Part shown: positions 8,901-50,196 of the stretch, in pieces
Position numbering within the stretch: the first letter of the stretch is position 1
Layout: every line of letters starts with the position of its first letter
Origin: Haliotis cracherodii
Taxonomy: Eukaryota
Length of the DNA: 64,000 nt
Assembly (NCBI RefSeq): GCF_022045235.1
Contig: NW_027266289.1
Coordinates: forward strand, 3,224,001-3,288,000
Direction: 5' to 3'
The notes under the pieces: model-generated
Database searches by the model: none
What the model saw: only the letters and a program-made list of their open reading frames with translations
What the model was told of the DNA's origin: nothing
Program-made: the position numbers and the translations under genes

Positions 8901-11900
8901 TACATTTGACTGTCCCACCTACGTCATTGCAATGCCACAGCTACGGAGACTGCAGGACGCATCCCTGGTTTGAGGAGGATATCGGACCAGACTGTCAGGA
9001 ACCATCTTTTCCAGGCTGGAATCCGTCCCAGAAGACCAGTTATCGTCCCAATTTTGCAACAGATTCATCGACAGCGACGCTTGCGTTGGTGCCATACCTT
9101 ACAGCCTTGGAATTTGAGAAACTTGGGACGAGTGTGGTTTAACCATGAATCACGATTTCTTCTTCACCGGCGAGATGGAAGACAACGTGTTTATCGTCGT
9201 CGAAATGAGCGTTTTGCCCTACATTGTGTAAGTGAATTGGACAAACTGGGTGGCGATAGTGTCATTGTGTGGGAGGCCATATCCTACACCACGAGATCGG
9301 ACTTGGTTGTGGTTCAGGGAGGGTTGCAGCAAATCGCTACATGAATCAAATTCTCACCTCCTAACAATCATTGTCCGACAGAAGGAGTTGTTTCAACAGG
9401 ACAACGCTCCACCACACACAGCTAGTGTCACGGTAGACTTCCTTCATGATGCTAACATCAGTGTCTTGCCCTGACCGTCGAGATCTCCAGATCTCAACCC
9501 AATCGAACACCTCTTGGATGAATTCGATCGACGTGTAGGTCAACGTCAGAACACGCTGCAGACACTCCCCCAACTGGCCAACGCGCCAACGCGAGTTCAG
9601 CGCAAACTTGTGGCCTTATATGACATGAAAATGGATAGTGTTCAATGCCTTTGTACAACGACAACATGTGACTATCGAGCTCCAAAATGTCAAATTTGTA
9701 TCTATGATATTAAATTAAATATATCGACTTTATCGACTACATTTATTAAAAAAAATATCTCTGTGCGTTTCTGTTTTTAAAGAGTGTATGTATAACAATG
9801 TGAATCTAGTGTGGAAAAGTCGTATTGAATATATCAGTGTGTAGACATATAGCGTTGAAGGTATCAGTGTCTACAGATGTCGTGTTGAATGTATCAGCGT
9901 GTAGACATATAGCGTTGAATGTATCAGTGTCTAGAGATGTCTTGTTGAATGGGTCAGTGTGTTGACAAGCCGTGTTGAATGTATCAGTGTGTAGACAAGT
10001 CGTGTTGAATGTATCAGTGTCTAGAGATGTCGTGTTGAATGTATCAGTGTGTAGACAAGTCGTGTTGAATGTATCAGTGTGTAGACAAGTCGTGTTGAAT
10101 GTATCAGTGTGTAGACAAGTCGTGTTGAATGTATCAGTGTGTAGACAAGTCGTGTTGAATGTATCAGTGTGTAGACAAGTCGTGTTGAATGTATCAGTGT
10201 GTGGACAAGTCGTGTTGAATGTATCAGTGTCTAGAGATGTCTTGTTGAATGTATCAGCGTGTAGACAAGTCGTGTTGAATGTATCAGTGTGTAGACAAGT
10301 CGTGTTGAATGTATCAGTGTGTAGACAAGTCGTGTTGAATGTATCAGTGTGTAGACAAGTCGTGTTGAATGTATCAGTGTGTAGACAAGTCGTGTTGAAT
10401 GTATCAGTGTGTAGACAATTCGTGTTGAATGTATCAGTGTCTAGAGATGTCGTGTTGAATGTATCAGTGTGTAGACAAGTCGTGTTGAATGTATCAGTGT
10501 GTAGACAAGTCGTGTTGAATGTATCAAGGTGTAGACAAGTCGTGTTGAATGTATCAGTGTGTAGACAAGTCGTGTTGAATGTATCATCGTGTAGACAAGT
10601 CGTGTTGAATATATCAGTGTGTAGACAGACCTTGTTTAAAGTATTAGTGTGTAGACAAGTCGTGCTGAGTTGTCTTGTTGAATGTGACAGTGTCTAGATT
10701 TGTCTTGTTGAATGTATTATTGTGCAGATATGACTTTTTGTAAATTTATTCTAGTGTAGATAAGTAGTGACGAAACATCATTTCAGATTTCTCTACATGA
10801 TTGTGCGATAACACTGGACATATTAAGTTACCATGGCAACACGGAAATACTTCCATTCACCTTACCAAGAGGATAGGTCCGGTTCACGGCGGTCTCACTC
10901 CAAACACTTGACTCTTGACCTTTGACTGCCTTCACCCTGAACACATAAGTAGTATTTGACTGAAGATTGGAAATGACCGTCCGCGTGGCCTTGACCCCAG
11001 TGGCCAGAAGCCGGTGTCCCCGCTGCTGATGGATGTGGTATTTGACGTTGTAATGACGTCCGTCCAGCAGCTGAGTCTCCCCCAGCCCCGGGTCATGCCA
11101 CCTGACAACGATGTCACTAGGGGAGACAACTGCTGTGGAGATAATCTCCGGCTCAGGGAGTTTAATGGAACCTGGAACATATATAAATATACTACTCAAA
11201 AGAAGTTAAGCATCACCTGATTCTTTCATGTTGGTAATGTTAATCTGTCATGGCATGAGAGATTAACTATTGTAATATGAAAGAATCAGGTGATCCTTAA
11301 CTTCTTTTGAGTAGTATATATGAATCGTCTTCTTCTGTCTTCAACACATTAATAACACACAGTTCACCTCACAAACGTTCCGACATTTCAGTATGTTCGC
11401 AACTAGAAATTGGACCTAAATGGACAGAATGTGCAAAATATTTAGAAATATCACAACATACACCAGTCCTCTCATCGCCTTTTCTGCAATACAAGATGGC
11501 TACGTCATGAATCGCAAAGAACAATGAAGGACGAAGCGTGGTTTATTTCACAATAAAACATTGTCGTCCTGGCGTCATGTCTGGAGAATCAAACAATCGC
11601 TCGTAACTTAGGACGTTGAATATTACTGGACGTTATTTTTAGAGAGGAGTGTGTACTGAGTGAGTGAGTGAGTGAGTGAGTATGGTCTTACGCCGCTTTT
11701 AGCAATATTCCAGCAATATCACGGCGGGGGACACCAGAAATGGGCTTCACACATTGTACCCGTGTCGGGAATGCAACCCGGGTCTTCGGCGAGTGTGTAG
11801 TGAGCTGTTCCCCACAGATGAAGCTGGGCAACGCAGATACACCTGAGGGCCGAGCTATAGCATCCCAATTATGACAGTTGTCAGGTGCAGGTAATCGACG

Positions 11901-20798: not shown

Positions 20799-21343
20799 CA
20801 TCTTCCCAAGGCAAGTGAGTAAACTGACTATAAAAGTCCCGTTTCCACCCTTGCCATACTAGGCTGGTATTATGGAGTTACATTTTGGCTGGACTAACGA
20901 GTCTATGCATGGTCCAATCAAAATCGCGCACCGAAATCGAAATCCGGTTCGTAAAGTGTCATGCAGATTTCGTTCGACTGCAGGATATGCAAAACATGTG
21001 CACCGCTAACTCGTTGTCAACAGAAATTTTCAAAATGTTTTCATGCTTTTAATCAAGGTGCTCACGTGATTTGATGCACTTCGCGATGTAAGACTCGTTT
21101 TATCACAATACAGATCTTGATTATCAATCAGATCGTCTTGACTGGGCGCCACCGTTTTGTTAGAAGCAAATGCAAGTGATACGAGAGGGTGAATCTGATT
21201 GGTCAATAGGAGAGGCATAGAAAGGACATAACTCGTAATAGCCACTGGTGGCGCTACGATCGAGCCCAGGAATTCCAGCCTAGTTCGGCAAGGGTGGAAA
21301 CTGGACTTTTAAAGTCAGTTAACTCACTTGCCTCGGGAAGACG
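20799..21343. mobile_element. MITE with ~65-bp TIRs and an 8-bp TSD (P- or hAT-type)
   Basis: Termini catcttccc...gggaagacg, TSD gacgcacg, second copy at 40305. Confidence 0.88.
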
Positions 21344-26135: not shown

Positions 26136-29100
26136 TCACACAGTTGTCACCATGCATGGCCGTTTGTTTTCTTCCTCTACACTGTTTTCGTCTATCTTCA
26201 TTGAGTTATTCAGATATGATTGTCTTCTTCTTGCCAGCAACATTTCAGTTTTTGTGGCATGTTTAGAGCCAAGAGCTGGAAGACCTGATCGTTTGTTGTC
26301 TGTGATCACGATGTCGGTTGTCACCTCTGACCTGTTGTTCTGGACCACTGGTGGTTGTTCTGGTTTGGGAGCAGCGGGCGGGCTGTAGTTAAATGGCGGA
26401 ACTATGGCGGAGGGGCTGGTGCGTGACTCTTGCCACAGAGTTCCTGCCTTGGGGTTGGCGAGCAGATTGCGGCAGTTCTCCGTCAACTTCGCCTCCTCTT
26501 TGCCCTTCTTGTCCTTTCCCTGTTTCTGAGAACCAAAGATTTTGCTTAGGCCTGGTTTCTTTCCAAACAGCGTCGACTTGATGCTTTGAGCAACAGACTT
26601 GCCCTCCTTTTTGGAGCTTTTAGATTTTGATTTTCCATCCTTCTTGCTGTCCCGCTTGACCCAGATCTGCGGCTCACCAGTTGGAACTGAGCTCATCTCA
26701 TCAGGGTATCTCCGCCACACATTCCCCGGCGTACTGTCATCACACGATTGGTTGACAATGGTGGACAAGGAACTAGGCACCGAGCGACAGGTTTCGTCTG
26801 CGTTGGGCAGTGTGAGAGATCCTTCTGCTCTCTTCTTCTTCCAAGTGCCACTGTTGACAGGCAGGGAGTGCATGGAGATGTCGTCCAGCGAGTCGACGGA
26901 GCAGGAGAGGCTGGACATGCAGCTGTTGTCGTACAGGAGGGTGGAGTCTGACTTGTCGCCGATTCCATTGACGGACACATGGATGTTGTCAGCTGTCACA
27001 CAGTGATTCAGCTGGGTCAGGGATGGACTCTCCTGGAAGGCTGTGTTCAGATCAGTGTCAAGGTCATCCTCCACATCCACTACATCAGAGGAAGGGACAC
27101 TGCCGGCATCCAGGTCGGCAGTGATCTTGTCATATGTGCTACTTTTAGTTATACCCTCTTTAGGAGCTTGTTCAGTGGCAAGAGAGTCTGTTCGTTTAGG
27201 TGGTGGTGGCTTGTTGGCTCGGGGCTTGCCACTGGGTGCCGGGAGATTGCTGGGTTTTGGAGGGGAGCGTTTGGTCTTGGCTGCTGCAGCAGAAACAGGA
27301 AGTCTGGAAGCTGTTGCTGATGGAGGAGAGTCCCCATCCTCCTTCTTCCACAGAGTAGCAATCTTACTGGGCACCTGCTTCTTCCCGCCAACCGGTGGCT
27401 TCTTGTCAGAAGTGGGCGTGGCCACCTTTTTGTCTCCAGCAGCTGACAAAGTCTTATTCGGTGATGCTCCCTCACTCTTCCTGCCTCCGACACTAGTATT
27501 AGACGAACGCCTTCCAACTGGTGTTGTAGGCCTGGAATTAGTCTTCAGACTAGCACTACTATCAGATTTCTTAAGTTCTGACTTGCCTTCCAGTCTCTTG
27601 AGGTTGGAGGCTGAGCCACCCCGATTGAGAGATGTTCCGCTGCTGGTTTTGCAAAGGCTGGACCCACTCTGGGTCTTGGTGAGGCTTGTTCCGCTGCTCG
27701 TCTTGCGCAGGTTGCCACCACTTCCAGACTTGTTCAGGTTGCTCTTGCTGTTACTTCTTGGTGGAGTTGTCTGTCCCTGGACTGGACGAGCAAGGTTAGA
27801 AGGCTTCTTACCAGCCAAGGACGTATTTGGAGTTCTTTTCACCGAGCCTGACCCATCGTTTCTCTGCATTTGAATTTGTTTGTACCGTGCATCATAGCTG
27901 TTCTCTTGCGAGGTGTCTACCATGAAGTTAAAACCATCCAGAGCTTTACTCCAAGCCTCATGTTGGCTTCCTCCAGAATTCCTATTGGAACCTCCAGAAT
28001 GACGCTGATTCTGAGATGGGGAGGATTTCTTTTCTCTCAGCTTCACGGACTCCGGGTTGGTCTTGTTGGCATTGTGGTCCATGTCTATTGTAGGTGCACT
28101 CACAGATGCAGTGTCCTTAGTGAAGGTCCCCTGTTTGATGAGGGGCTTAGGTCTGTCAGTCTTAGTCTTGGCTGCGTTGTCTTTGGAGGACTGTAGCTTT
28201 GACTGAGGACTAGTTTTAGCTAGAGGTGACCTTGGAATGCTGGATGTTGAGTTGCTCCTGTTGGTAGCTGCAGGGCTGCGAGACTGACGCCTATTAGCAG
28301 CAGTTTTGTTGGGTGTGCTGCTGGCACTGGGACCCTGGGTCTGAGATCGAGGAGACACCTTCTTCACCCCAGTGGTCTGGTTCTGAGACTTGGCAACCGG
28401 AGATCTGCTGTTGGTGACTGGACGTGCACTGTGGCTGCTCACTTCTGATCTTGTTGTCGATGTTGACTTGACCGATGAAGCAGAGGACCTGCTACTGGTG
28501 GTGTAAAGAGGTTTTCTGCGTCCTCTCACAGCAGTTGGGTCCCCTTTGGGCGGAGTTCGGTTTAAGTTTTCTTTGCCAGGTTTAACTATCTTTGGTCGTT
28601 TCTGTGATGCCACTGATCCCTCTGCCTGTGAGATGGTGGAGCCAGAGTACTCACTGACCTTCTCTGAGGTGTTGGACCACGACACGGAGATCTCCGACGC
28701 TGTGTCCGAGGTGTAGTCATTAGAAACAAGTGACAGTGTCTCATTCTCAATAAACATGTCCTCGTCACATACACTGCCAGACATCTGGTTTGTGGACAGC
28801 TCCGACACAATCAAGCTGGCATTTTCTTCGAGTAACAGAATATCTTCAGGTGAGATTTCTTCCTCAAACGAGCTGGAGGTGTCTCGGTTGTTCACGATTG
28901 TCTCATCGGCAAAGATGTTTCTGACAACAGTAGTGTCTGCCTCGTTCCCTGACACCTCAGACTCGTCCATCATCCCATCCTCATCTGTGTGGATTTCTTG
29001 GGGGAAGGAAGTGTTCATCACATCATCACAACTGCCCTGGGACTGGGTGAGAGCCATCTTCATAATAAAGCTGTCATTGAGGTGGGACTTCTCGCTGTCG

Positions 29101-32100
29101 ATTTTCTCCGTCATGGAGTCTGTAACTGCCGAATCGCAGCTCGCCGTGAGCAGCTTCTCACGCAATGCCCTCGCCTCCTCCAACATGCGGTTATCAAATG
29201 ATGCAGTCGTCTCCTCCACCGCGTCAGCAGACCCTCGAAAGGGCCGGTTGAGTTTGGCGATCTCACTGTTAGAACTATCTTTCTTCGCCTTGACAAAGTA
29301 TTCACTGTCCTGGGAGTGAGACCGCTTCCAGCCGAAGCGCGAGTTGTGTGTGTGTTGTGAGGACTGAGTGTTCCAGGAGCTGGCTAGAGATTCCTGAGTG
29401 CTGGACGACTGAGACACCCTCTGTATCTCCCCTGCATCGGAGCAGCTGTAGGACATGGCCTTGCTGCCAGGCTTCTTGAACACACCCTCATCCATTGAGT
29501 CATCTGACCTCATTTCCAGGGACGTACTCTTCGACAACTTCTTGTCACTCTTAACTTTACCCCCAATTGACCGTCTAGATTTGTCCTCCCCACGACTGAT
29601 CCGACTCTTTGGCATCGCTGAGCTGATACACTCGTCTAGCAGAGCCTGTTCTGAGGGTGTGGGGTCAAAGGCTGTGGATTCAATGCTGAGCTCACTGAGA
29701 GAGCTGTTTCGTGAAAAGACAGTTGGAGTGTCCTCCACCTTGAAAGGCACACGCTGGTCTGTGATCACAGTGGTGTCCGATGTGGGTTTGTTTGGTTCTG
29801 GGCTGTGTAAAGAGCTGAGTGAAGAGTTTCGGGAGAAGCACATGGGCGTGTCCTCCATTGCATACCGCTTGTAGTTGTCCTCACTGTCCTTGGTATGATC
29901 GATGATGACGCTGCTCTCCTCACTGGACTGCCCCACGACATGTCTCTCTTTGGGTAGCGAGCTGGAGCTGGAGCTGACTGTGTCCGACACCTCGCCATGC
30001 TTTTCCACAAGACCCTGCACGTCTCCGCTCAGCATGCTAAGTTCACTCAGTGAATCGTTGCGAGAGAACACCAGCGGCGTGCCTTCCACTTGATACACTT
30101 GTGGAGAGTCCATTGAGTCCCCTCCATAGAACACAGAGTCATCTATTTGACCTTGGCAAGCCGAAGTCATATTGGAAACCTTATGTGCGCTTGTCTCAGA
30201 AAGCCTGAATCTGGCTGCATCATCCACGGAATCAATAGTCAGATCGCTTAGTGACGTAGCATTCGAAAAGTTGAGAGGTGTCCCCTCAACAGCATAAGAT
30301 TTCACGGTATCGGCTGCTTCACAGGGTTTGGATGTAGCCTGTGGTGGAGGTTGGGTGGCAACACTTGATGTTCTCTGTGGCTGGAAGGCAGCTGGAGCTC
30401 CAAGCAACTGTCGGACGTTTGGAGCAACTTGAGCTGCTGGGATTTTAGAAGACGATGATGGCGGTGAGTGTTTGATGTGTGGTATAACTTGGGATGCAGG
30501 TTTTCGGTTGATATCCTCGGCACCTTCGGCCTGACGGTCCATGTCCAAACGCCTTGCTACTTTACTTTTGGGCATGGCTGCTTGGATGACCTGCGACACA
30601 AGCAGTTCCTCAGTTTCCTCGCACAGGGAGCTGTTGTCAGATGTGATGTCGGAAGTCATGTCCTCCACCGCCGGAGCTGGTGACTGCTTCATGGACGTCT
30701 CATCAAAGGACAGCGAGCTCAGGTCACTCACTGAATTAGCATTGGAGAAGTTGAGTGGTGTTCCTTCTGTGGCGTACGTCTTGACTGTGTCAGAGTTGAA
30801 GTCAGGTGAGTAGCTGTCCACGTCCAACTGACTTGTTTGTCTGGGGGTCGACTGCTGCTGGATGTCGCTCACATATTGCAGCTGATGAGGTGTGGAGACT
30901 GTTGGCACCACAGGGGGCTTGTTGGGTGTGAGTTGAGGTCGGGGCTGAGGTCCTACAGAGCGGGATCCTCCTGTCTGGGGCGTCTGCTGAAGGCGGTTGT
31001 TCTGAGGGCCTCGAGGTGTTTGAGGTCCTCGGTTGGGTCCACCACGTGGAGTCTGTGGTGACCTGGGAGCAGGTTGAGCTAATTGTGATGTAAGTGATGA
31101 TTTGGTTGTACTCTGAGCTATACGGGAACCTGTCTTCCTGTCATCAAGTTTGCTGGGTGTCAGGGGGACAGTCTTACCAGGAGGACTTAATTTTCCGGCA
31201 GGAGATTTCGGGTCTTTACGAGTGAGTTTGTTGACAGCTGTGGGAGATTTGGAAGCTTGTGCTGCGATATTTGTCACTTTCGTTGGAAGCTTGGATTTGG
31301 TAGCGGATCCTAGGTTATCAATCTTTGGCACACCAGACTTCTTTTTGATTGCATTGTCTGACGAGCTTTTTCTCATTTTGCGACTGGAGTTATTTGGCAC
31401 TGGCATAGCGGAGCTGATGCACTGAGCTAGGATGTCCTCTTCTCCCTCAGACACCTCCGACATGGAAGAGTTCTCTTCATTCAAGTGGTTGGAAGCCTTC
31501 GTATCTTCAGATGTACTGTCATCCTGGCTGGGGTCAGTCTTCTTTCCTCCAGCCTCATCATCGATTGTTAGAGCACTGAGCATGCTGTGTGTGTCGGACA
31601 TGGTGGGTGGAGTGCCTTCATCTGCGTATACCACAGGGGCCTCCATTTTGCTGACTACAGACAGGTTGTCTGCGGCTATCAGGGCTGCCAGGCTGGACAC
31701 AGGTGGGGCTACATCAGAATCACACGCGATCTCCTCTGTGAAGTCTTCAGGTTTTTGCTCCAGGTCTGCCTTTTCTTCCTGTGGCTCTGGTTTGGGACTT
31801 GTAGGCATTGTTTCACTGGGGGAGTCCGGGAGTTCGCTGGGTGACACAACCTCGCTTGCACGCCTACTGTACTCACTGATCACCGAGCTGTGCACAGACT
31901 GAGTATCAAAACTGCTGAGAGACCCCAGCGAGCTGCAGCGGGAGAACATCAGTGGGGTCTCCTCCACATGGTGGTGATCATCAAATGTCACTGTCTTGTG
32001 CTCCTTCTCCACCACTTCCGCCGTCCCTGGTGTGGTAGATCCGGCTGTTCCAGGTGTTGTAGATCCTGCAGTCCCAGGCATGGCAGATCCGACCGTCCCA

Positions 32101-34831
32101 GATGTTTTGCTTGTCTTCCTGGCCTCGGAGTTCTCGATTACTGATGTGGACATTGCCTCTCCCTTCTCTGACTCCTCTATGCTGGAGAGGACAAGCTGAT
32201 GGCGACCTACATGGGACTCAGGGAGATCCCGAGCTTCACTGCTGTGCAGGCTGCTGAGAGAGCTGACCCTGGAGAAGCAGACTGGCGTCCCCTCTTCACA
32301 GTACGTCTTGGGTTGGTCCATGGGCACGTCCCTCGATGTGGGGGAGTGGAAAGTCTGCTCAAGTGCTCCCTCTGCAGCCTCTTCCTCCTCAGGGTTGGTA
32401 CTGCTGGAGTCTTCGACCACAGCAGGCCCTGGACCAGATTTGGCTGTGCTAGAAGCACAATTTGGTTCTTCAAATGTGTTGCTGTAGTCCTTCGTTTCAT
32501 CCTCCGCTTCCTCACACTCTTTCTTAGGCTCAGCTTCTTCTTTGTATTGAATCTTGCCGGTGAGGTCTGTAAGTGATGTGGCAGTGGACAGGTATGGTGT
32601 CCCTTCTGTGCAGAATGTCTTCACCTGGTCATCCGTGAAGAAGCTGGGCATGTACTCATCCAGCCTCTCATTGGTCCTGCGTGCTTCCTCCAGCTTGCAG
32701 TCAGCACAGTGGGGGTCAGACTCCTCGTACGGCGTGCTGGAATCTGTCTCAGCCTCCTGGTATCGTACATTGGGTTCAGGCTGGTGATACCGTTGGCCTG
32801 GTTCAGCCTCCTGGTATCGAACATTGGCTTCAGGTTGGTGATACCGTTGGCCTGGGTCAGCCTCCTGGTATCTTACACTGTAGTTGATTGGTTGATCCTG
32901 AAACGTTTCTTCTACATTCTCTGCATAACGGAGACTGAAGTTGGTCGGCTGGTCGTCCATGTCGATGTCGGTCTCAGCGTATGCTCCATATTGCGTTGGG
33001 ATGCCCTGGTGAGCTCCAACATTGCGGTGACGAGGCTCGTACACGTTGCGAGCGTTGTGCGGTGCTGGGAAGCGGTTGTGCACCATGTTTGGCATAGCTC
33101 TTGGTACCATTGTGGAGCCAACAAAATTGCCAACTTTGACCTGAGGTCGATTATTAAGCTGGTCACCACGACTACCACCAGCTCCAACATCCTGGTACTT
33201 TAGGCTGTAGTTGATTGGCTGTTCATCTCCCTCCCCAGCTCCAGTGTCACCCACATCGACATTGTTCCTCTTGGGGCCAATGTACATCTCCTTAGCATTA
33301 GGGAGGTAGTTAAAAGGCTTCTTACCAAATTGTTCAATGAGGCTTCTTTGAGGACCATTGAAGTTACCTCCCTTGATCTGAGCGGACTGATATGCCAGAG
33401 CGCGAACATTGCGAGGACCTTGTTGAGATTCAGGTTCAGCTGTTGAGTTGGCTGGTAGACCAGCATGCATTGCAACTTCCTGCATCACTTGGAGTATCCG
33501 ACTGTTTGGTGCTCCTCCTATTCGGGTTCTGTCCACAGCGCACCCGTCTGAGTTGAACCTGTGCAATCCTCCTCCATCTCTCTTCCTCTCCAGGCTGCCA
33601 GCCTGACGTTCATGCAGTAGGCGTGAGCTCTTGGCCAGCATGGTGTGTGCCCGTGACCGGTCATGGGAGATGTCAGAGTGAGTGCTGCCCACGCTGTCCT
33701 GACTGCCAGACCGTGCAACCCTCTGTGGGGACCGCAGTTTGCCGTCCACTCCGGCGCTGTCCGTACTCCCTGACCTAGGGAACATGTGACCTCGCATCAT
33801 GGGTCGGCGAGGTTCTGTGTCGGCCACGGGGAACACCACGACGTTGTCCCCAGAGTACCGGCGTGTGTAGGCATTGTCCTTCTTGGTCTCAGTTGGACTG
33901 CTCCGCGGACTCTCCACATTCTCACAGGTTTCCGCCAGGTTTTCATCCAACTCCTGTTCTAGTGCTCTGACTTTCCTGGCATGAAGTCCTGGACGGTTCG
34001 ACCCAGAGACCCGGTCAAGGTCAAGGTTCTTCATGGCTGGGCGGGCTGATAGGAGATTCTTGAGGGCAGCAGCACTTCCCATGGATATCATCTTGTGTTT
34101 TGAGTGCACCAAGTTCCTCAGCATGCTGACTGCACCCATCTCCCACAAGGCCTGCTGGTCCTCCTGGCATCGGGCTGACAGGTTCCACAATGTCCCACAC
34201 GCGTTGCTCACAATCGTCAGGCTCGTGGAGCGCAGATGCTTGAGCAGGAGCTGCAGGCAGCTGTGTTGCCGCAACACCTTGCGGTAGTCCTCCCTCACGG
34301 CGATGTGACTGGACACATTGCGGAGGATGCCCCCGCCGTTCTCTATGATGGCGAGTGTCTTGGAGGGGCTCTTATAGGTGAGCATGCTGACCAGGAATTC
34401 CAGCGCCCCTGACACAGCACAGATGTCCGCCTTGTTCTCTGTGCAGTGGGCAGACAGGTTCCACAAGGCACTTAGAATACTTTTCAGTGTGGACTCCTTC
34501 TTCACTTGCATAGCAGCTGCCATCAGCGTGGTGACAGCATTCACCTCACGGAGAGTCTTTTTACTGGCGAGGTCGGCGCGCCAAGACAAGTTGCGTAACA
34601 CGCTTGCAGCTACCTGACACAGGTCTTCATTCGGGGAACCGAGCTGGGCCACCAGGCCCTCCATCGCACCCTTCATGGAGCACAGCAATGCCTTGTTGGT
34701 CCCATCGCCGAACGTCAGGTTGGTCAGAGCCATGCACGCGTATCGCCTCATGGTGATGTTGTATTGCTCTGTGGTAGGGCCGTGGGCGTCGTGGTCCACC
34801 TCCAGCAGCTCAGCGATAGCCTGCAGACCAC
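26136..34831 (-). CDS. APC: APC terminal giant coding exon (ARM repeats, 15R/20R/SAMP repeats, basic region, PDZ-binding end)
   Basis: Acceptor ttgttgcag|GTGGTCTG (AG at 34832-33). Uninterrupted ORF (2887-aa ORF in the track) ending CMVTTV, TGA at 26136-38. Confidence 0.97.
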
Positions 34832-37800
34832 CTGCAACAAAGATGTTCGGTGAAGGGGTGGGACAATCTAGAATGTACAGTTAGACCATCTCGAATGTGC
34901 AGTTAGACCATCTGGAATGTACAGTTAGACCATCTAGAATGTACAGTTAGACCATTTCGAATGTACAATTAGACCATCTGGAATGTACAGTTAGACCATC
35001 TGGAATGTACAGTTAGACCATCTAGAAAGTACAATTAGAACCATCTAGAAAGTACAATTAGATCATCTGGAATGTACAATGAGGCCATCTGGAATGTACA
35101 ACTAGACCATCTGGAAAGTACAGTCAGACCATCTAGAAAGTACAATTAGATCATCTGGAAAAAACACTTAGACCATCTCGAATGTACAGTCAGGCCATCT
35201 AGAATGTACAACTAGACCATCTAGAAGGTACATTAGACCATCTGGAATGTACAATTACACCATCTAGAAAGTACAACTAGACCATCTAGAAGGGACATTA
35301 GACCATCTGGAATGTACAGTTAGACCATCTGGAATGTACAAATAGGCCATCTGGAATGTACAATCAGACCATCTGAAAAGAATAATTAGACCATCTAGAA
35401 AGTACAATAAGCCCATCTAGAAAGTACAATTAGATCATCTGGAATGTACAATTAGACCATCTGGAATGTACAGTTAGACCATCTGGAATGTACAATCAGA
35501 CCACCTAAAGAGAACAATAAGACCATCTAGAAAGTACAATAAGATCATCTGGAATGTACAATGAGGCCACCTGGAATGTACAGTCAGACCATCTGGATTG
35601 TACAATTAGATAATCTGGAAAAAACAGTTGGACCATCTGGAATGTACAGTCAGACCATCTGGATTGTACAATTAGATCATCTGGAAAAATCCGAGACCAT
35701 CTGGAATGTACAATCAGACCGTCTGAATGTACAATGAAACCATCTGGAATGTACAATCAGACCATCTGGAATGTACAATCAGACCATCTAGAAAGTACAA
35801 TTAGATCATCTAGAGGTGAGGTGAAATTGGGTTTAACGTCGCGTCCAAGATTATTGCACTTATATAGCGACGTGCATGCATGTGTATGTGTGTGTGTGGC
35901 TGCTTGTACTAGTCCGGGCTGATGCCGATTTATAGTGCTAGCTCACTGAGATACCATGCCGCAGTTTAACATGAATACCCCACTCAGACACAGTATACTG
36001 ACTCCGAGCCGACCAGTCCTTGTTTTAGCCCCTTAATGCCGAGCGCCAGACAGGGTAACAACAAGTACAATCTTTTAACGTCTTTTTGTATGACGCGGCC
36101 CGGGATCGAACCCTGGACCTTCCGCTCTCCGGGCGGACGCTCTACCACAGGACCACGGAGGCGGTCAGATCATCTAGAAAGAACACTTAGACCATCTGGA
36201 ATGTACAATTAGACCATCTAGAAAGAACAATTAGACCATCTAGAAGGTACAATTAGACCATCTACAATGTACAATCAGACCATCTAGAAAGTACAATTAT
36301 ACCATCTAGAAAGTACAATTTGACCATCTAGAAAGTACAATTAGACCATCTAAAAGGTAGAATTAGACCATCTAGAAGGTACAATTAGACCATCTAGAAA
36401 GTACAATTAGACCATCTGGAAGGTACATTTGGACCATTTCATAATCTGGGGGTGACAGAATTTTTCTTATCAAGATTACATATTTTTTTAATTAAAAACT
36501 ATGAGCCTGAACTTTTTATAAAGAATAACAACAATATAATTTTTCGGGTAACTATTCTCTTTTTTTTCAACAGTCTGAAGCATAATTATTATTTTCAAGA
36601 GTTTTCTGGGGACAATACATTTGTTTGGATAAAATCCCAGGGTATTTTAAAATAAAATATGAAATGGTCGGTCGGTCCCTTAGACCATCTGGGATGTAGA
36701 GTCAGACCATCTGGGATGTAGAGCTGGTCTTACCTAGTGTGCAGATAGCGTGACGGTGCTCCTCGTCGAAGGACAGCTTCATAAGAGCAGCTATGGCTGG
36801 CCCAGGATGATGGTCAATGTCTGAGGGTCGGGCTGCTGCAACAGGAACAGGAACAAGTTCAGGATGAGGTCTACCCACATACATCTACCCACAGGACATC
36901 GAAACACAGGATGTCTCCCCACCGGATGTCTACCCACAGGACATCTACCCACAGGACGTCTACCCACAGGACATCTACCCACAGGATGTCTACCCACCGG
37001 ATATCTACCCACAGGACATCTACCCACATGACGTCTACCCACATGACGTCTACCCACAGGACGTCTACCCACATGACGTCTACCCTCAGGATGTCTACCC
37101 ACATGACATCTACCCACAGGATGTCTACCCACAGGACGTCTACCCACAGGACATCTACCCACAGGACATCTACCCACAGGATGTGTACCTACAGGACGTC
37201 TACCCACAGGATGTGTACCTACAGGACGTCTACCCACATGAGGATGTCTACCCACAGGACGTCTCCCCACATGAGGATGTCTACCCACAGGATGACTACC
37301 AACATGACTTCTACCCACAGGACCTCTACCCACATGTTGTTGTCTACCCACAGGACGTCTACCCACATGATGTGTACCTACAGGACGTCTACCCACAGGA
37401 TGTCTACCTACAGGACATCTACCCACATGAGGATGTCTACCCACAGGACGTCTACCCACAGGACATCTACCCACATGAGGATGTCTACCCACAGGACATC
37501 TACCCACATGAGGATGTCTACCCACAGGACTTCTACCCACAGGACCTCTACCCACATGAGGTTGTCTACCCACAGGATGTCTACCAACAGGACTTCTACC
37601 CACAGAACCTCTACCCACATGAGGATGTCTACCTACAGTAGGACGTAACCCTCCTCCCACAAGTCGCCTACCTCCACTGCCTGGCTTGTTGTTCTTTGGT
37701 TCGTCTTCTTCCTCGGAGTTATCTCCCCTCAGTTGGTCACAGTGTGCTCTGATTTGTTCCAGGAGCCTGAGGACACGAGCCTCACGCCGACCCCGCTTGT

Positions 37801-40800
37801 CATCGGGGTGAGAATGTACGATGTTGTGCAGCGCTGCGGAGGCACGTGCTCGCGCTGCTTTACTTCCTCTTGTGTTGCCTAGCAACCCAGAATCCTTATC
37901 ACTCCCGTGCAGCAATTGGATCAATAGAGGAAGACACCCTGGAAACAGAAAAGAGTGAAATCAGCAACAGCAACGTCAGACAGGAACATAACTCAGGAGC
38001 AGCTTTGACAACCGCGCACATTCAGAACCACAGACTGATGTAAGCACACTGTCATCGCATGTTGAATGAATCCAGTTGAGCACAGCTCTGTGTGTCAGTT
38101 ACTGAAGCAGCAGCAGACTGTCTCATGGCTAAACAGCTAGACTCACCTGACTGTCTCATGGCTATACAGCTAGACTCACCTGACTGTCTCATGGCTATAC
38201 AGCTAGACTCACCTGACTGTCTCATGGCTATACAGCTAGACTCACCTGACTGTCTCATGGCTATACAGCTAGACTCACCTGACTGTCTCATGGCCATACA
38301 GCTAGACTCACCTGACTGTCTCATGGCTATACAGCTAGACTCACCTGTCTCATGGCTATACAGCTAGACTCACCTGACTGCCTCATGGCTATACAGCTAG
38401 ACTCACCTGTCTGTCTCATGGCTATACAGCTAGACCCACCTGACTGTCTCATGGCTATACAGCTAGACTCACCTGACTGTCTCATGGCTATACAGCTAGA
38501 CTCACCTGACTGTCTCATGGCTATACAGCCAGACTCACCTGACTGTCTCATGGCTATACAGCTAGACTCACCTGACTGTCTCATGGCTATACAGCTAAAC
38601 TCACCTGACTGTCTCATGGCTATACAGCTAGACTCACCTGACTGTCTCATGGCTATACAGCTGTCCTGGGAACTGGACATGGCCAGCAGGGTTCTACTCA
38701 TGTCGTCCTTGTCATGCGTGCCCAGCATCGACAGCAGCGAGTACACCATCTCCACCTGGTGGCAGAAACAAACATCAGCATACATAAGGGGGATGTATGT
38801 GCGGAGGTGATGAAAAGTGAGGTGACGTACACGAGATGATGACATGAGGGTGGGGTTGTATTGGGAGGTTACCTAGGAGGCGGCGTTGTATTGGGAGGTG
38901 ACCTAAGGGGTGGCATTGTATTGGGAGGTGACCCAGATGGCGGCGTATTGAAAAGTGACCTAGGAGGTGGCATTGTATTGGGAGGTGACCTAGATGGCGG
39001 CGTTGTATTGGGAGGTGACCTAAGGGGTGGCGTTGTATTGGGAAGTAACCTAGGAGGTGGTGTATTGGGAGGTGACCTAGATGGCAGCGTTGTATTGGGA
39101 GGTGACCTAAGGGGTGGCATTGTATTGGGAGGTGACCCAGATGGCGGCGTTGTATTGAGAAGTGACCTAGGAGGTGGCATTGTATTGGGAGGTGACCTAG
39201 GATGCAGGGTTGTATTGGGAGGTGACCTAGGAGGTAGTGTATTAGGAGATGACCTAGATGGCAGCGTTGTATTGGGAGGTGACCTAGGAGGTGGCGTTGT
39301 ATTGGGAGGTGACCTAGATGGCGGCGTTGTATTGGGAAGTGACCTAGGAGGTGGCGTTGTATTGTGAGGTGACCCAGATGGCGGCGTTGTATTGGGAAGT
39401 GACCTAGGATGCAGGGTTGTATTGGGAGGTGACCTAGCAGGTGGCGTTGTATTGGGAGGTGACCTGGATGGTGGCGTTGTATTGGGAAGTGACCTAGGAG
39501 GTGGCGTTGTATTGGGAGGTGACAGTTACCTTGGTGCCAAGTTGCTGGTGGGGATGCTGCTCGGTCCTGTCATCACTTGGAGCAGCGGCGGAGCTGTTGG
39601 TGCTGCTGGTGTTGGTGGAGTTGAAGCTCATGACGCTTGCAAGGTCATGACCTCTGAGGTCAGGGATCACCCCCTCTTCTCCATTTGGAAGCTCTGTAAG
39701 TATATGGAAGACAGGGTGTATAGCCTACCCTTCGCTATTGGCAAAGACTCGTGGTATATGGAAGAGAGGGTGTATAGCCTACCCTTCCCTATTGGCAAGG
39801 ACTCGTGGTATATGGAAGACAGGGTGTATAGCTTACCCTTCCCTATTGGCAAGGACTCGTGGTATATGGAAGACAGGGTGTACAACTTACCCTTCCCTAT
39901 TGGCCAGGACCCATGGTATATGGAAGACAGGGTGTATAACTTACCCTTCCCTATTGGCCAGGACCCGTGGTATATGGAAGACAGGGTGTTGTTCTGGGAG
40001 ATATTGGCCTGCAGGATGTCGGGGTTTTCCTGGATGATGACGTCCGACGTCTGTGTTGCTATGCTGATCATGACAGACCCGTGTGTCAGGCCAAACACAG
40101 ACTTGTCGCTGGTACGTGCGTTGTCAATGCCGGGCTTCGGGACAAAGATCTGAAGTGGACATCAGGAGGGAACTCAGATCAGGGAAACACAACATCAGGC
40201 TGTACTGGCAAACACTACACATGTAGCACTGACACCCCTCTGCCTTCAGCAGACATAGGACACAGACGAGACACACACAGTGCAAAGGACAAGACCGACA
40301 CAGGCATCTTCCCCAGGCAAGTGAGTTAACTGACTTTAAAAGTCCAGTTTCCACCCTTGCCGAACTTGGCTGGAATTACTGGGCTCGATCGTACTTTTAC
40401 CAGTAATGCCACTTCTTAGCCTCTCCTACGGACCAATCAGATTCCACCTCTCGTACCACTTGCGTTCGCTTCACACAAAATGGTGGGACCCAGTCAGGGT
40501 GATCTGATCGATAATCAAGATCTATATTGTGATAAAACGGGTCTTACATCGCGAAATGCATCAAATCACGTGAGCACCTTAACTAAAAACATGAAAAAAT
40601 TTGCAAAATATCTGCTGAAACGAGTTGGCGCTGTACATGTTTTGCAAATCCTGCAATCGACCAAAATCTGCACGACAGTTTACGAACTGGATTTCGATTT
40701 CAGTGTGCGATTTTGATTGGACTGTGCACAGACTCGTTAGTCCCGCCAAAATGTAACTCCATAATCCCAGCCTAGTTCGGCAAGGGTGGAAACTGGACTT

Positions 40801-43800
40801 TTAGGGTTAGTTAACACTCTTGCCCCGGGAAGATGGACACAGGAAGCAGGTAACTGACCTCTCCACACAGCGCTGTGTTGGTCGCCACATCCTTCACACA
40901 GCCTGGGTTCAGTCCCCGCTCCACGCTCATCTGCTGCTGCTTCAGTAACTGAAAGACAAGGGCTGTGCTCAACTGGCTTCATTCAACATGCAATGACAGT
41001 GTGTAGCATCTTTCTGTGGCTCTCAATGTGTGTGCTTGTTTATCAGTGGTTGTTAGTGTTTCTCTGTGTGTATGGTTGAGTGTGGTCGTGTGTTGTCGTT
41101 GGATGTGTGTGTGCTTGTCTATCAGTGGTTGTTAGTGTTTCTCTGTGTGCATGATTGAGTATGTTTGTGTGTTGTCTTTTGATGTGTGTGTGGTTGTGTG
41201 AGTGGTTGTGTGTGTGGTTATGTGTGTGGTTGTGTGTGTGGTTATGTGTGTGTGGTTGTGTGTGAGGTTGTGTGTGTGGTTATGTGTGTGTGGTTGTGTG
41301 TGNNNNNNNNNNNNNNNNNNNNNNNNNNNNNNNNNNNNNNNNNNNNNNNNNNNNNNNNNNNNNNNNNNNNNNNNNNNNNNNNNNNNNNNNNNNNNNNNNN
41401 NNNNNNNNNNNNNNNNNNNNNNNNNNNNNNNNNNNNNNNNNNNNNNNNNNNNNNNNNNNNNNNNNNNNNNNNNNNNNNNNNNNNNNNNNNNNNNNNNNNN
41501 NNNNNNNNNNNNNNNNNNNNNNNNNNNNNNNNNNNGTGGTTGTGTGTGTGGTTGTGTGAGTGGTTGTGTGTGTGGTTGTGTGTGGTTGTGTGTGTGGTTG
41601 TGTGTGTGGTTGTGTGTGTGGTTGTGTGTGAGGTTGTGTGAGTGGTTGTGTGTGTGGTTGTGTGAGTGGTTGTGTGTGTGGTTGTGTGAGTGGTTGTGTG
41701 TGTGGTTGTGTGTGGTTGTGTGTGTGGTTGTGTGAGTGGTTGTGTGAGTGGTTGTGTGTGTGGTTGTGTGTGGTTGTGTGTGTGGTTGTGTGAGTGGTTG
41801 TGTGAGTGGTTGTGTGTGTGGTTGTGTGTGTGGTTGTGTGTGTGGTTGTGTGTGGTTGTGTGTGTGGTTGTGTGAGTGGTTGTGTGAGTGGTTGTGTTTG
41901 TGGTTGTGTGTGTGGTTGTGTGTGGTTGTGTGTGTGGTTGTGTGTGGTTGTGTGTGTGGTTGTGTGAGTGGTTGTGTGAGTGGTTGTGTTTGTGGTTGTG
42001 TGTGTGGTTGTGTGTGGTTGTGTGTGGTTGTGTGTGTGGTTGTGTGTGTGGTTGTGTGTGTGGTTGTGTGTGTGGTTGTGTGAGTGGTTGTGTGTGTGGT
42101 TGTGTGAGTGGTTGTGTGTGTGGTTGTGTGTGTGGTTGTGTGTGTGGTTGTGTGAGTGGTTGTGTGTGTGGTTGTGTGAGTGGTTGTGTGAGTGGTTGTG
42201 TGTGTGGTTGTGTGAGTGGTTGTGTGTGTGGTTGTGTGTGTGGTTGTGTGTGTGGTTGTGTGTGTGGTTGTGTGTGTGGTTGTGTGTGTGGTTGTGTGAG
42301 TGGTTGTGTGTGTGGTTGTGTGAGTGGTTGTGTGTGTGGTTGTGTGTGTGGTTGTGTGTGGTTGTGTGTGTGGTTGTGTGAGTGGTTGTGTGAGTGGTTG
42401 TGTTTGTGGTTGTGTGTGTGGTTGTGTGTGGTTGTGTGTGTGGTTGTGTGTGGTTGTGTGTGTGGTTGTGTGAGTGGTTGTGTGAGTGGTTGTGTTTGTG
42501 GTTGTGTGTGTGGTTGTGTGTGGTTGTGTGTGTGGTTGTGTGAGTGGTTGTGTGTGTGGTTGTGTGTGTGGTTGTGTGAGTGGTTGTGTGAGTGGTTATG
42601 TGTGAAGGGTTATTTGAGTGGTTGTGTGTGTGGTGTGAGTGGTTGTGTGTGTGGTTGTGTGAGTGGTTATGTGAGTGGTTATGTAAGAGTCGTTATGTGT
42701 GAGTGGTTGTGTGAGTGGATATGTGTGAAGGGTCATGTGTATTGTCTGTGGTTAACAGTGTGTGGTTGGGTGTGTGGTCATGTTGTGTTGTGTCGTGTCA
42801 TGTCGTGTCATAGGGTGTTGTGTTGTGTTCACCTGCTGCTCTCGGTGGCGTTGTTGCAGCATCATCATCTCCGCCTCGATGTTGCGTATCCGCTGCAGAC
42901 GAGCCTCCTGTCGTTGAGCGATGTGTTCACTTGTCCCAAACTTCTCTGTCATGGCTTCCTCCAGTTTCTTGGCTTCGTACTCCACCTGTCTCCGAGTCAT
43001 GTCTGTCTGCAGGTTATACTGAAACACAGGACCACCAGATGTCTCATCTCAACCGCTCACCCAGACAACAACAACCACCCACCATAGAAGATGGAGACAC
43101 AGAACCCAATGAGTGAGTGATTGAGTTGGGTTTAACGCCGCTTTTAACAGTATTAATAGTACTCCAGTTATATCACAGCGTGACAGCTTAATGTGGGAGG
43201 AAAGCCCGAAGTGATGCAGGCCTCAGACGTTTACCACTTTGGTGAAACCCACGAGCACAGGTATGGCGCTGACAAACCTAGACACATAATTGGGGCGAAC
43301 CGGGATTCGAACCCATAATCATAGGTTTCTGGCGTACCCAAGGGACGCAACTCTGCACAGCGAATCGCGGCGCCTTAGACAACTGGGCCACCCGTGCCCA
43401 CAGAACCCAATGACATACAGTTTGTAAATTAGACAACAGGATCATTGCTTTCTTGCTTGTCTGGTGTCCACAGGACTCCAGCTGTATGACATGGGCATGT
43501 ATGTAATTCAATCTGGAAAAGACAATCCAGTGATTGGTTGTTTGTTTGTGTGTTGTTTAACGCCGCACTCAGCAATATTCCAGCTATATGACAGCGGTCT
43601 GTAAATAATCAAGTCTGGACCAGACAATCCAGTGATTAATATCATGACCATCGATCCACGCAATTGAGATCGATGACATGCATGAACCAAGTAAGCGAGC
43701 CTGACCACCCAATCCCGTTAGTCGCCTTTTACGACAAGCATAGTCACCTTTTACGGCAAGCAAGGGTTCCAGTGATTGATGTTATGAGCAACAATTGACC

Positions 43801-47512: not shown

Positions 47513-48714
47513 TCCCTATCCCTATCTAATGTTGGGTATCTGTATAGTGTTATATCTAATGTTAGGTACCTGTATAGTGTCATATCTAATGTTCGGTGTC
47601 TGTATAGTGTTATATCTAATGTTGGGTGTGTGTATAGTGTCATATATAATGTTCGGTGTCTGTTTAGTGTTATATCTAATGTTGGGTACCTGTATAGTGT
47701 TATATCTAATGTTGGGTACATGTATAGTGTTATATCTAATGTTGGGTACCTGTATAGTGTTATATCTAATGTTGGGTGTCCGTATAGTGTTATATCTAAT
47801 GTTGGGTGTCTGTATAGTGTTATATCTAATGTTGGGTGTCTGTATAGTGTTATATCTAATGTTGGGTGTCCGTATAGTGTTATATCTAATGTTGGGTGTC
47901 TATATAGTGTTATATCTAATGTTGGGTGTCTGTATAGTGTTATATCTAATGTTGGGTGTCTGTATAGTGTTATATCTAATGTTGGGTGTGTGTATAGTGT
48001 TATATCTAATGTTCGGTGTCTGTATAGTGTTATATCTAATGTTCGGTGTCTGTATAGTTTTATATCTAATGTTGGGTGTCTGTATAGTGTTATATCTAAT
48101 GTTGGGTGTCTGTATAGTGTTATATTTAATGTTGGGTGTCTGTATAGTGTTATATCTAATGTTGGGTGTCTGTATAGTGTTATATCTAATGTTGGGTGTC
48201 TGTATAGTGTTATATCTAATGTTGGGTGTCTGTATAGTGTTATATCTAATGTTGGGTGTCTGTATAGTGTTATATCTAATGTTGGGTGTGTGTATAGTGT
48301 TATATCTAATGTTCGGTGTCTGTATAGTGTTATATCTAATGTTGGGTGTGTGTATAGTGTTATATCTAATGTTCGGTGTCTGTATAGTGTTATATCTAAT
48401 GTTGGGTGTCTGTATAGTTTTATATCTAATGTTGGGTGTCTGTATAGTGTTATATCTAATGTTGGGTGTCTGTATAGTGTTATATTTAATGTTGGGTGTC
48501 TGTATAGTGTTATATCTAATGTTGGGTGTCTGTATAGTGTTATATCTAATGTTGGGTGTCTGTATAGTGTTATATCTAATGTTGGGTGTCTGTATAGTGT
48601 TATATCTAATGTTGGGTGTCTGTATAGTGTTATATCTAATGTTGGGTGTCTGTATAGTGTTATATCTAATGTTGGGTGTCTGTATAGTGTTAGATCTAAT
48701 GTTGGGTGTGTGTA

Positions 48715-50196
48715 TATAGATAATACTACACTCATTCTCGTTAGATACCATTTTTACGAAACGTGTGGACTTTCTATGGTATCTGACCGAGCGAAAGCGA
48801 GGTCAGATAGCATAGAAAGTTCACGAGTTTCGTAAAAATGGTATCTAACGAGAATGAGTGTGGTATTTTATTTATTACCAACGTTAAATATATATTTAAG
48901 TGTAAATATATATTTAAGAGTAAATACATAACACTTCGTTCGTTGACAGACAAAACTGAAATCGGTTGCAAAATCTGGTTGCGCATGAATATTGATATAT
49001 AACCAAATATGGGCATTGTTGACATGTTTATGCATACGCATTAACAACATGCGCCTGCTGTTCTGTTTGCAAACAAACCAGCACCGACGCTCAAGATCCT
49101 TTTGGAAGAAAGTCTTCAACTTATGGTAATTCAAGCGCCATGTTGTTAGTACGCAGGACGCCGATAAGAAAATTTGAAATGTCACATTAGCGCCGCTCTT
49201 TGAATATCAGACCAACAGTCGGTCACTCGCACTGCCGGGGTCCCGTCTGTGCAATCAAAATGGTTCGGTTTCCTTGATCTATCAGCTGAATTTATATCAT
49301 GTTCGTACCATTTTGGAAGAGGGAAATCAGAGTGTTCGCCAAAGACATTCATGTTAACTGTACCACCCTATACTGAAGACGTGAAAATCAACAAACTCAA
49401 GTCTGCTTGCATGTCAGTGACAGCTTCGAACGATCGAAGGGCAAGGTCGCCACCGGAATAAGAAAAGACAACAGCGATCCACTCACAGCGTTTTATGCTA
49501 GAATGTTATTATTCACATTTGGGATGTTTGGGGCCACAAAATCAGAAGTCATGCACACTTCCACGGAGTTTTCGAATGATTTGTATCGGAACTGTTAACT
49601 TTAAGTGATCTGGTCGTGCTGTCGTGTACTTTCATTCATGAACAACACCTCCCGAAACAGCGCCACAAAACACGCTTCAAAGGGGACACCGATGGCACAA
49701 CTGGATCATACCAAATAAGTCTCGATATCTGTTCAGATAGTTTAAACAGACTTCGTTTCACCACGCTTATCCTTTAACGTTTAATCAAATTGAAAGTTGC
49801 GAAAGTGGTCGGGTGCGTCACGCACAAGGGGACCCTCACTCTATTGATCGGTAGTCGTACATTGTAAATCGATTTATAGATCTAGCTCGATTATATATAA
49901 TGTCTGTAGAAGCTCTATGCATAACTAACATAGAATGCAAACTGAATTTGATGCGTGTGACTATCTTGTTTAGTTTCATAAAGTGTTTGTAAATATCTCT
50001 CGTTCTCATGAATTTCTTCAGTTCTGCCTTGAATGACGTCTCACGATTTTTTATAAATGAAAAAAGTAGTCCCGGTGTGACAGAGGTCACGGTTATCCAA
50101 TCAAAACGAATAAAACAAGGTCAACCTTGTGCGACACATGTGTGACGTACGGATTAAGTATCTTACCACCTGTATCTTCACCACGTGGGTAATAAA
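48715..50196. mobile_element. Non-autonomous element with a terminal ~160-bp palindrome, inserted in the 30-bp satellite (possibly Crypton-type)
   Basis: Palindrome 48718-48878 centred on cgagcgaaagcgag. Internal inverted repeat tttattaccaacgt / acgtgggtaataaa. The satellite resumes on both sides. Confidence 0.7.

What the first reader, a model, noticed from the sequence alone, without database searches (positions are those of the whole stretch)
38007..41040. Intronic inverted copy of an APC 3' splice site: candidate long-range RNA duplex masking a 90-nt cassette exon
Plus-strand 38007-38117 (...cacactgtcatcgcatgttgaatgaatccagttgagcacagctctgtgtgtcagttactgaagcagcagcaga) is an imperfect reverse complement of 40930-41040. 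That second region covers the likely branch region, the polypyrimidine tract, the AG and the first 19 nt of the symmetric exon 40859-40948. The 23 nt over the AG and exon start match perfectly, while mismatches fall in the intronic part. In pre-mRNA the pairing would hide the acceptor and loop out ~2.8 kb holding four exons. The copy also abuts the end of the 33-bp donor ladder. It could drive in-frame skipping of the 90-nt exon or promote back-splicing (circRNA). It is not a recognisable TE.
Basis: partly seen in the sequence, partly recalled or inferred. Interest (0 to 1): 0.78.

Follow-up and report, generated by a model that had tools for sequence, protein, structure and literature searches.

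The report
Inverted copy of an APC splice acceptor
An abalone APC intron holds a single upside-down copy of an upstream exon's splice acceptor, probably left by DNA-break repair, that could pair strongly with the original in the RNA but has no shown effect on splicing.

Summary
Window 38007-38117 is an imperfect reverse complement of 40930-41040, with 96 identical positions, 13 substitutions and 4 gap columns. 23 nt across the AG and exon start are perfect. These are the only two copies in the 1.18-Gb genome, whereas a neighbouring MITE gives thousands of candidates.

The gene is Haliotis cracherodii APC, on the minus strand. The 90-nt exon, 40948-40859, is genuine and old.

As RNA the arms give a predicted duplex of -121 kcal/mol for the core; shuffles average -26.5. 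They pair in the minimum-energy fold of the whole 3.2-kb stretch.

The "cassette exon" reading is not supported. All 7 RefSeq isoforms that reach this region, in two abalone species, include the exon. The six transition differences show no bias towards G-U pairs in the sense RNA.

Length (111 nt), distance (2.8 kb), inverted orientation and splice-site content fit published repair-mediated duplication. The copy sits at the end of a 33-bp exon-end/donor minisatellite.

Skipping, back-splicing, editing and conservation therefore remain untested.

This scan had already noted another inverted exon copy elsewhere in this genome.

The parts
38007..38117 (-). Arm A, the derived inverted copy. In the pre-mRNA it reads as the reverse complement of the E90 acceptor region. 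The core is 38045-38117 (about 92% identical) and the outer part is 38007-38044 (about 70%).
40930..41040 (-). Arm B, the parent. It comprises the last ~92 nt of the intron upstream of E90 (probable branch region, pyrimidine tract, AG) plus the first 19 nt of exon E90. The core is 40930-41003.
40859..40948 (-). APC exon E90 (90 nt, phase 0-0), encoding LLKQQQMSVERGLNPGCVKDVATNTALCGE. Its acceptor lies inside arm B.
   Evidence: conserved across molluscs
39945..40149 (-). APC exon E205, inside the loop between the arms.
39530..39693 (-). APC exon E164, inside the loop.
38638..38755 (-). APC exon E118, the last exon inside the loop. Its end and donor are the unit of the 33-bp array.
38116..38662 (-). 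33-bp minisatellite (16.7 copies, 95% matches) made of the exon end plus the gtgagt donor. Arm A starts where it ends, with a 2-nt overlap (GA) between the two homologies.
37939..38637 (-). The 699-nt intron that holds the array and arm A. Arm A lies 66-177 nt upstream of its acceptor AG.
37672..37938 (-). Next APC exon (267 nt), downstream of arm A.
42833..43018 (-). APC exon E186, upstream of E90. It supplies the donor for the E90 acceptor.
40305..40835 (.). High-copy MITE with 74-nt terminal inverted repeats, starting 24 nt after the E90 donor. It is not part of the duplication. It served as the positive control for the copy-number search.

Best explanation
Arm A is a one-off inverted duplicate of the acceptor region of APC exon E90. 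It copies about 92 nt of intron plus 19 nt of exon. It was pasted 2.8 kb downstream into the intron after exon E118, at the far end of the 33-bp exon-end/donor minisatellite. The most likely origin is repair of a DNA break at that minisatellite by synthesis that copied nearby DNA in the opposite orientation. [quoted passage not shown] Both arms are transcribed in one pre-mRNA and can in principle form a very stable duplex over the E90 acceptor. I judge that it is mainly a structural by-product. The upstream intron is probably spliced before arm A is transcribed, or helicases open the duplex, so E90 stays constitutive. Shown here: the duplication, its uniqueness, the gene model, the duplex thermodynamics, and constitutive inclusion of E90 in gene models. 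Inferred: the repair origin and the small effect on splicing.
For: There are two copies only in 1,182,234,246 bases, while the same search detects a real repeat family next door. E90 is the parent: it is in the RefSeq proteins of two Haliotis species and its C-terminal half is conserved in other molluscs. The copy is 111 nt long, 2812 nt from its source, inverted, and holds a partial exon with its intron boundary. This fits the repair-mediated duplications described in passages of PMC2671141. That paper reports 824 proximal cases, with a median of 147 bp and a maximum of 619 bp. In 66% of all its duplicons the donor lay within 3 kb. Splice sites and partial exons were among the copied sequences, and one exon copy lay inverted in an intron of its own gene. 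There is a 2-nt overlap (GA) at the array/arm junction. E90 is present in 7 of 7 informative Haliotis isoforms. Segment length is the same in 5 of 5 Pomacea, 2 of 2 Liolophura and 10 of 10 Mytilus models. Of the 6 transition differences, 2 keep G-U in the sense RNA and 4 would do so only in the antisense RNA, so there is no sign of selection for pairing. The perfect 23 nt is not significant if only arm A is free to change (P = 0.16-0.30).
Against: No RNA data could be examined, and gene models can miss minor or tissue-specific isoforms and all circular RNAs. The duplex is thermodynamically overwhelming: -121.2 kcal/mol against -26.5 +/- 4.5 for 500 shuffles, and 93 of 111 arm B bases pair with arm A in the 3171-nt minimum-energy fold. 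Some formation in vivo is therefore plausible. The core is better kept than the outer part (p = 0.027), which could reflect constraint on pairing. No empty site in a relative was seen, so the repair origin rests on resemblance. A 2-nt microhomology is weak evidence. The E90 donor GAG|gtcagt is, by my recall of the consensus, suboptimal, which would make the exon sensitive to small perturbations.
Confidence: 0.55

Rival explanations
1. A functional long-range RNA duplex. Arm A pairs with the E90 acceptor in the pre-mRNA and hides the AG and pyrimidine tract. This tunes in-frame skipping of E90. Alternatively, it loops out E90-E118 and so promotes a 577-nt back-spliced circle.
For: The predicted duplex is very stable and dominates the global fold. 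Long-range pairings that mask acceptors or loop out exons are established: PMC2724269 (abstract and section 13) and PMC8052449 (passages). Inverted repeats of 30-40 nt suffice for circularisation in human reporter genes, per a passage of the review PMC11766002. The core is better conserved than the outer arm. E90 is symmetric at 90 nt.
Against: 0 of 7 informative Haliotis isoform models skip E90. There is no G-U bias in the sense strand. Arm A is transcribed 2.8 kb after the acceptor, so co-transcriptional splicing can win. A duplex that covers the acceptor itself should hinder back-splicing to that acceptor as well. In human genes, complementary regions are depleted around active splice sites (PMC8052449 passage). 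Skipping all four looped exons would shift the frame (577 nt).
Confidence: 0.2
2. An ADAR substrate. The duplex forms in unspliced RNA and is edited A-to-I. Arm A then acts as an accidental editing-complementary sequence for the start of E90 (lysine and glutamine codons) or for the acceptor AG itself.
For: The predicted double-stranded region is about 70-110 bp with few mismatches and includes 19 exon bases and the AG. Complementary regions are enriched in editing sites in human genes (PMC8052449 passage). ADAR acts on inverted-repeat pairs (PMC11766002 passage). That molluscs have active ADARs is my recall, not a call.
Against: No RNA-DNA differences could be examined. Editing of the exon needs the upstream intron to persist until arm A is made. 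Nothing in the sequence itself points to editing.
Confidence: 0.15
3. Assembly artefact: a fold-back or chimeric join at the end of a tandem array created the inverted copy.
For: Arm A sits exactly at the end of a 547-bp minisatellite, and there is an N run in the intron upstream of E90.
Against: The arms differ at 17 of 113 aligned columns and lie 2.8 kb apart within otherwise ordinary exon-intron sequence that matches the RefSeq protein. Artefactual fold-backs are expected to be near-identical and contiguous; that expectation is my inference.
Confidence: 0.03

Closest known systems
Repair-mediated duplication by capture of proximal chromosomal DNA (Pace et al. 2009, PMC2671141; passages read)
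   Same: A short segment (111 nt, against a median of 147 bp) was copied from a donor less than 3 kb away on the same chromosome. There are two copies only. The copy may be inverted. Intron/exon boundaries and splice sites are among the sequences copied. The ACSBG2 exon copy in that paper lies inverted in an intron of its own gene.
   Different: Those cases were recognised because they interrupt transposons and were dated with empty orthologous sites. Here the acceptor site is the end of a minisatellite and no empty site could be examined. The breakpoint signature is limited to a 2-nt overlap.
Long-range complementary regions that modulate splicing (Raker et al. 2009, PMC2724269; Kalmykova et al. 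2021, PMC8052449)
   Same: Two complementary stretches sit in one pre-mRNA, kilobases apart. One overlaps an acceptor, and exons lie in the loop.
   Different: The known functional cases are conserved between species, usually 9-30 nt long, and associated with alternative splicing. This pair is a young-looking 73-111-nt duplicate over an acceptor that all gene models use, and its conservation is untested.
Flanking inverted repeats that drive exon circularisation (Alu pairs, short 30-40-nt repeats; review PMC11766002, passage)
   Same: Inverted repeats lie in the introns on either side of a block of internal exons.
   Different: Here one arm covers the acceptor and 19 nt of the exon itself instead of lying clear of the splice site. 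No back-splice junction has been seen.
Inverted exon copy in a calbindin-like gene of the same genome (scan note s1-829595)
   Same: [quoted passage not shown] The follow-up agent read it as repair-mediated.
   Different: That copy lies inside a Tc1 transposon and includes a whole exon. I did not examine that locus.

Membership tests
Repair-mediated duplication (RD) | Short duplicated segment (up to about 619 bp) | tested here: met
   111 nt aligned, with the core at 73 nt
Repair-mediated duplication (RD) | Donor within about 5 kb on the same chromosome | tested here: met
   2812 nt between the arms
Repair-mediated duplication (RD) | Unique two-copy duplication, not a mobile-element family | tested here: met
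   2 matches in the whole genome with either arm. The positive-control MITE gave 7818 candidates.
Repair-mediated duplication (RD) | Breakpoints with microhomology, filler or small deletions | tested here: inconclusive
   There is a 2-nt overlap at the array junction. The other end fades into diverged sequence.
Repair-mediated duplication (RD) | Empty orthologous site in an outgroup | not testable with these tools
The metagenome scan found nothing.
Splicing-regulatory long-range RNA structure | Stable complementarity between two sites of one pre-mRNA | tested here: met
   -121.2 kcal/mol for the core, z about -21. 93 of 111 bases pair in the global fold.
Splicing-regulatory long-range RNA structure | Affected splice site or exon is alternatively used | tested here: not met
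   E90 is present in 7 of 7 informative RefSeq isoforms. This is annotation level only; no reads were examined.
Splicing-regulatory long-range RNA structure | Conservation with compensatory or pairing-preserving changes | tested here: inconclusive
   No orthologous DNA was available. Within the pair, 2 transitions keep G-U in the sense RNA against 4 in the antisense only.
Splicing-regulatory long-range RNA structure | Splicing changes on disruption and is restored on compensation | not testable with these tools
   This is a bench experiment.
circRNA-promoting flanking inverted repeats | Back-splice junction between the flanked exons | not testable with these tools
The main text of the H. discus hannai circRNA paper has 0 mentions of APC. 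Its supplements are closed.
ADAR editing-complementary sequence | A-to-G differences between RNA and DNA within the duplex | not testable with these tools
   No reads were laid.
Transposable element / MITE | Many dispersed copies with terminal repeats | tested here: not met
   Only the two arms are found. There is no further match in the window.

The most novel reading that the evidence does not exclude
A DNA-repair accident has given abalone APC a ready-made 70-110-bp clamp over a constitutive acceptor. In vivo this clamp sets the order or timing of intron removal across four exons. It then yields either a 577-nt APC circular RNA (E90 to E118) or ADAR editing of the exon start and the AG. That would be a caught-in-the-act example of how repair-mediated duplication creates new long-range splicing or editing control.
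Probability: 0.15. Interest if true: 0.6.

Novelty: new member of a known kind. Interest (0 to 1): 0.3.

Why it matters
If the duplex acts in vivo, it would show a repair-mediated duplication turning directly into a long-range RNA structure over an active splice site of a conserved Wnt-pathway gene. That would link a known mutational process to the birth of splicing, circular-RNA or editing control. As the evidence stands, it is a clean and well-delimited example of a short inverted proximal duplication in a mollusc genome. The same genome holds at least one other inverted exon copy noted by this scan. It is useful as a test locus but not surprising in kind.

Tried and rejected
Transposon origin is rejected. 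Either arm finds only the two arms in the genome, whereas the adjacent MITE finds thousands.

A known RNA family is rejected. An Rfam scan of the region around the arms, at E up to 1, gave only two weak miRNA-like hits at 36287-36418, far below their gathering scores.

A chimeric duplication with a second donor is rejected. 37900-38130 matches nothing else in the window beyond itself, arm B and the array units.

Selection for pairing has no support from the G-U asymmetry or from the perfect 23 nt. The core-versus-outer difference is left unexplained. It may reflect the fast-evolving 79-bp tandem repeat that overlaps the outer end of arm B.

Transcript fragments were sought in the protein collection. 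This gave 3 hits among 14 candidates, all non-Haliotis and covering 40% of the query, so it was uninformative.

The metagenome scan for the 23-mer gave 0 hits.

The sequencing-run list gave 24 rows from 13 studies, with shares of 0.19-0.27 and none on record as RNA. The exon fraction of the query is about 0.19 by my arithmetic. That is compatible with spliced RNA but shows nothing about E90 itself.

Isoform lists of other molluscs covered 62 proteins. 28 had both anchors and 34 lacked an anchor and were dropped as uninformative. Only the single Solemya model lacks the E90-equivalent segment.

The supplements of PMC11764893, which hold the circRNA host-gene lists, could bear on the back-splicing claim but are closed.
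Full report
What is there. The window is part of the Haliotis cracherodii (black abalone) genome. Its 2887-codon open frame at 26139-34799 (minus strand) is 100% identical to RefSeq XP_071115935.1, 'adenomatous polyposis coli protein-like isoform X2'. Matching that protein to the window exon by exon fixes the minus-strand exons. They are E186 43018-42833, E90 40948-40859, E205 40149-39945, E164 39693-39530, E118 38755-38638, and the next exon 37938-37672. All have AG acceptors and GT donors.

The observation. The repeat finder finds two adjoining inverted pairs, 38045-38089 / 40959-41003 and 38089-38117 / 40930-40958, each 93% complementary. Every difference falls in the intron-derived part. 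The 23 nt covering TCAG and the first 19 exon bases are identical, and none of 100 shuffles of the window gave two such matches. Arm B holds the last ~92 nt of the intron upstream of E90, the AG and the exon start. Arm A lies 2812 nt downstream in the transcript, in the 699-nt intron after E118. It sits 66-177 nt before that intron's acceptor, exactly where the 33-bp array ends. The array has 16.7 copies of exon end plus gtgagt.

Is it a repeat family? No. Searching the whole 1.18-Gb assembly with either arm returns only the arm itself and its partner, at 86% over 110 nt. The tool can see repeats. The 531-bp element at 40305-40835 has 74-nt terminal inverted repeats and begins 24 nt after the E90 donor. 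It gave 7818 first-look candidates, and all 40 scored were full-length copies at 88-91%. In the window, searched in two pieces that leave out a short stretch, six inverted pairs of at least 40 nt lie within 5 kb. Three are MITE-like with about 400-nt spacing and two are tight hairpins. This pair is the only long-range one.

Which copy is the parent? E90 is a real and old exon. Its peptide is in the RefSeq APC proteins of H. cracherodii and H. asinina. Its C-terminal half (…VKDVATNTALCGE) aligns with Gigantopelta, Patella, Liolophura and Octopus APC. Arm B is therefore the source and arm A the derived copy.

RNA potential. As minus-strand RNA the 73/74-nt cores give a duplex of -121.2 kcal/mol. 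500 shuffles of arm A give -26.5 +/- 4.5 with a best value of -43.6, and each arm folds alone at only -11.5 or -13.0. The full arms give -161.3.

Does it act? What can be said comes from gene models. Of 11 RefSeq isoforms in the two Haliotis species, 7 contain the upstream exon, and all 7 contain E90. The other 4 start downstream, at MSFNST… or MRQSG…, and are uninformative. Among other molluscs' models the anchor-to-anchor segment has one length within each species: Pomacea 5 of 5, Liolophura 2 of 2 and Mytilus species 10 of 10. Only the single Solemya model lacks the segment, and 34 of the 62 proteins examined lacked an anchor and were dropped. E90 is thus not a known cassette.

The arms carry no signature of selection for pairing. 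Of 6 transitions, 2 keep a G-U pair in the sense RNA and 4 would do so only in the antisense RNA. The perfect 23 nt is expected with P = 0.16-0.30 if only arm A is free to change. One observation points the other way. The core is less diverged than the outer 38 nt (p = 0.027), although the outer end of arm B overlaps a 79-bp tandem repeat.

Origin. A scan note on another locus of this genome (s1-829595) pointed me to repair-mediated duplication. Passages of Pace et al. 2009 (PMC2671141) describe 824 proximal duplications in the human genome. They had a median of 147 bp and a maximum of 619 bp. For 66% of all the paper's duplicons the donor lay within 3 kb. Most breakpoints examined showed 2-9-nt microhomology, filler or small deletions. 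The copied sequences included partial exons and splice sites, and one exon copy lay inverted in an intron of its own gene. Arm A matches this on length, distance, orientation, content and copy number. The only breakpoint evidence is a 2-nt overlap between array homology, which starts at 38116, and arm homology, which ends at 38117. A break in or beside the minisatellite, repaired by copying nearby DNA, is my preferred origin. The empty-site test could not be run.

Comparison with known RNA mechanisms. Long-range pairings that mask acceptors or loop out exons are documented in Drosophila minigenes (PMC2724269, abstract and section 13). That paper saw effects in alternatively spliced introns but not in constitutively spliced ones. 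In human genes, conserved complementary regions suppress looped-out exons, surround circular RNAs and are rich in editing sites. They are, however, depleted around active splice sites (PMC8052449, passages). Repeats of 30-40 nt suffice for circularisation in reporters (review PMC11766002, passage). The present pair works like these on paper. It fails the one membership feature I could test, alternative use of the site, at annotation level. A duplex that covers the acceptor should hinder back-splicing to that acceptor too. Arm A is also made 2.8 kb after the acceptor, which gives co-transcriptional splicing a head start. Both of these points are inference. A search of the main text of the one abalone circRNA paper found no mention of APC. 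Its supplements are closed.

Verdict. This is a real, unique, inverted proximal duplication of a splice acceptor, most likely born by break repair at a minisatellite. It has strong but unproven pairing potential. The regulatory reading remains possible, at roughly one chance in five for splicing or circularisation and somewhat less for editing. It currently has no positive evidence beyond thermodynamics.

Noticed in passing
window 40305-40835 and 20801-21341: A 531-bp MITE with 74-nt terminal inverted repeats. It is high-copy in the genome: 7818 first-look candidates, and the 40 scored were all full-length at 88-91%. One copy begins 24 nt after the E90 donor. A second copy in the window is 85% identical and in the opposite orientation.
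   Followed up: partly
window 36869-37619, 38116-38662, 38855-39523, 39700-39989, 41536-42727: Five consecutive APC introns each begin with a minisatellite, of period 15, 33, 30, 54 and 12 bp. The 33-bp and 54-bp arrays repeat the exon end plus its donor. Scan notes s1-823231, s1-823325 and s1-836499 cover such 'donor ladders'.
   Followed up: partly
window 38638-38662 and the array units to 38116: RefSeq isoforms X6 (H. cracherodii) and X5 (H. asinina) start at MRQSG. This is the ATG that lies inside the 33-bp unit. Which copy or transcript start gives rise to them is unknown.
   Followed up: no
window 40853-40861: The E90 donor is GAG|gtcagt, with C at intron position +3. By my recall of the consensus this is suboptimal. 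The E90 acceptor's pyrimidine content (13 of 18) is like that of its neighbours.
   Followed up: partly
protein P0005 (Solemya velum APC model): This is the only mollusc model examined that lacks the segment equivalent to E90, with 60 aa between the anchors against 71-100 elsewhere. The cause may be a skipped or a missed exon.
   Followed up: no
window 41027-41197: A 79-bp tandem repeat (2.2 copies, 90% matches) overlaps the outer end of arm B. The rest of that intron is a C/A-rich 12-bp array with an N run, which I left alone.
   Followed up: no
window 11187-11319, 48714-48875, 11672-12343: Two tight hairpin-type inverted repeats have 66- and 75-nt arms with 1- and 12-nt spacers. A third inverted pair, with 120-nt arms, is unrelated to the MITE above.
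   Followed up: no
window 36287-36418: Two weak miRNA-family hits inside a 22-bp tandem array, at 26-27 bits against gathering scores of 94-96. They are most likely chance.
   Followed up: no
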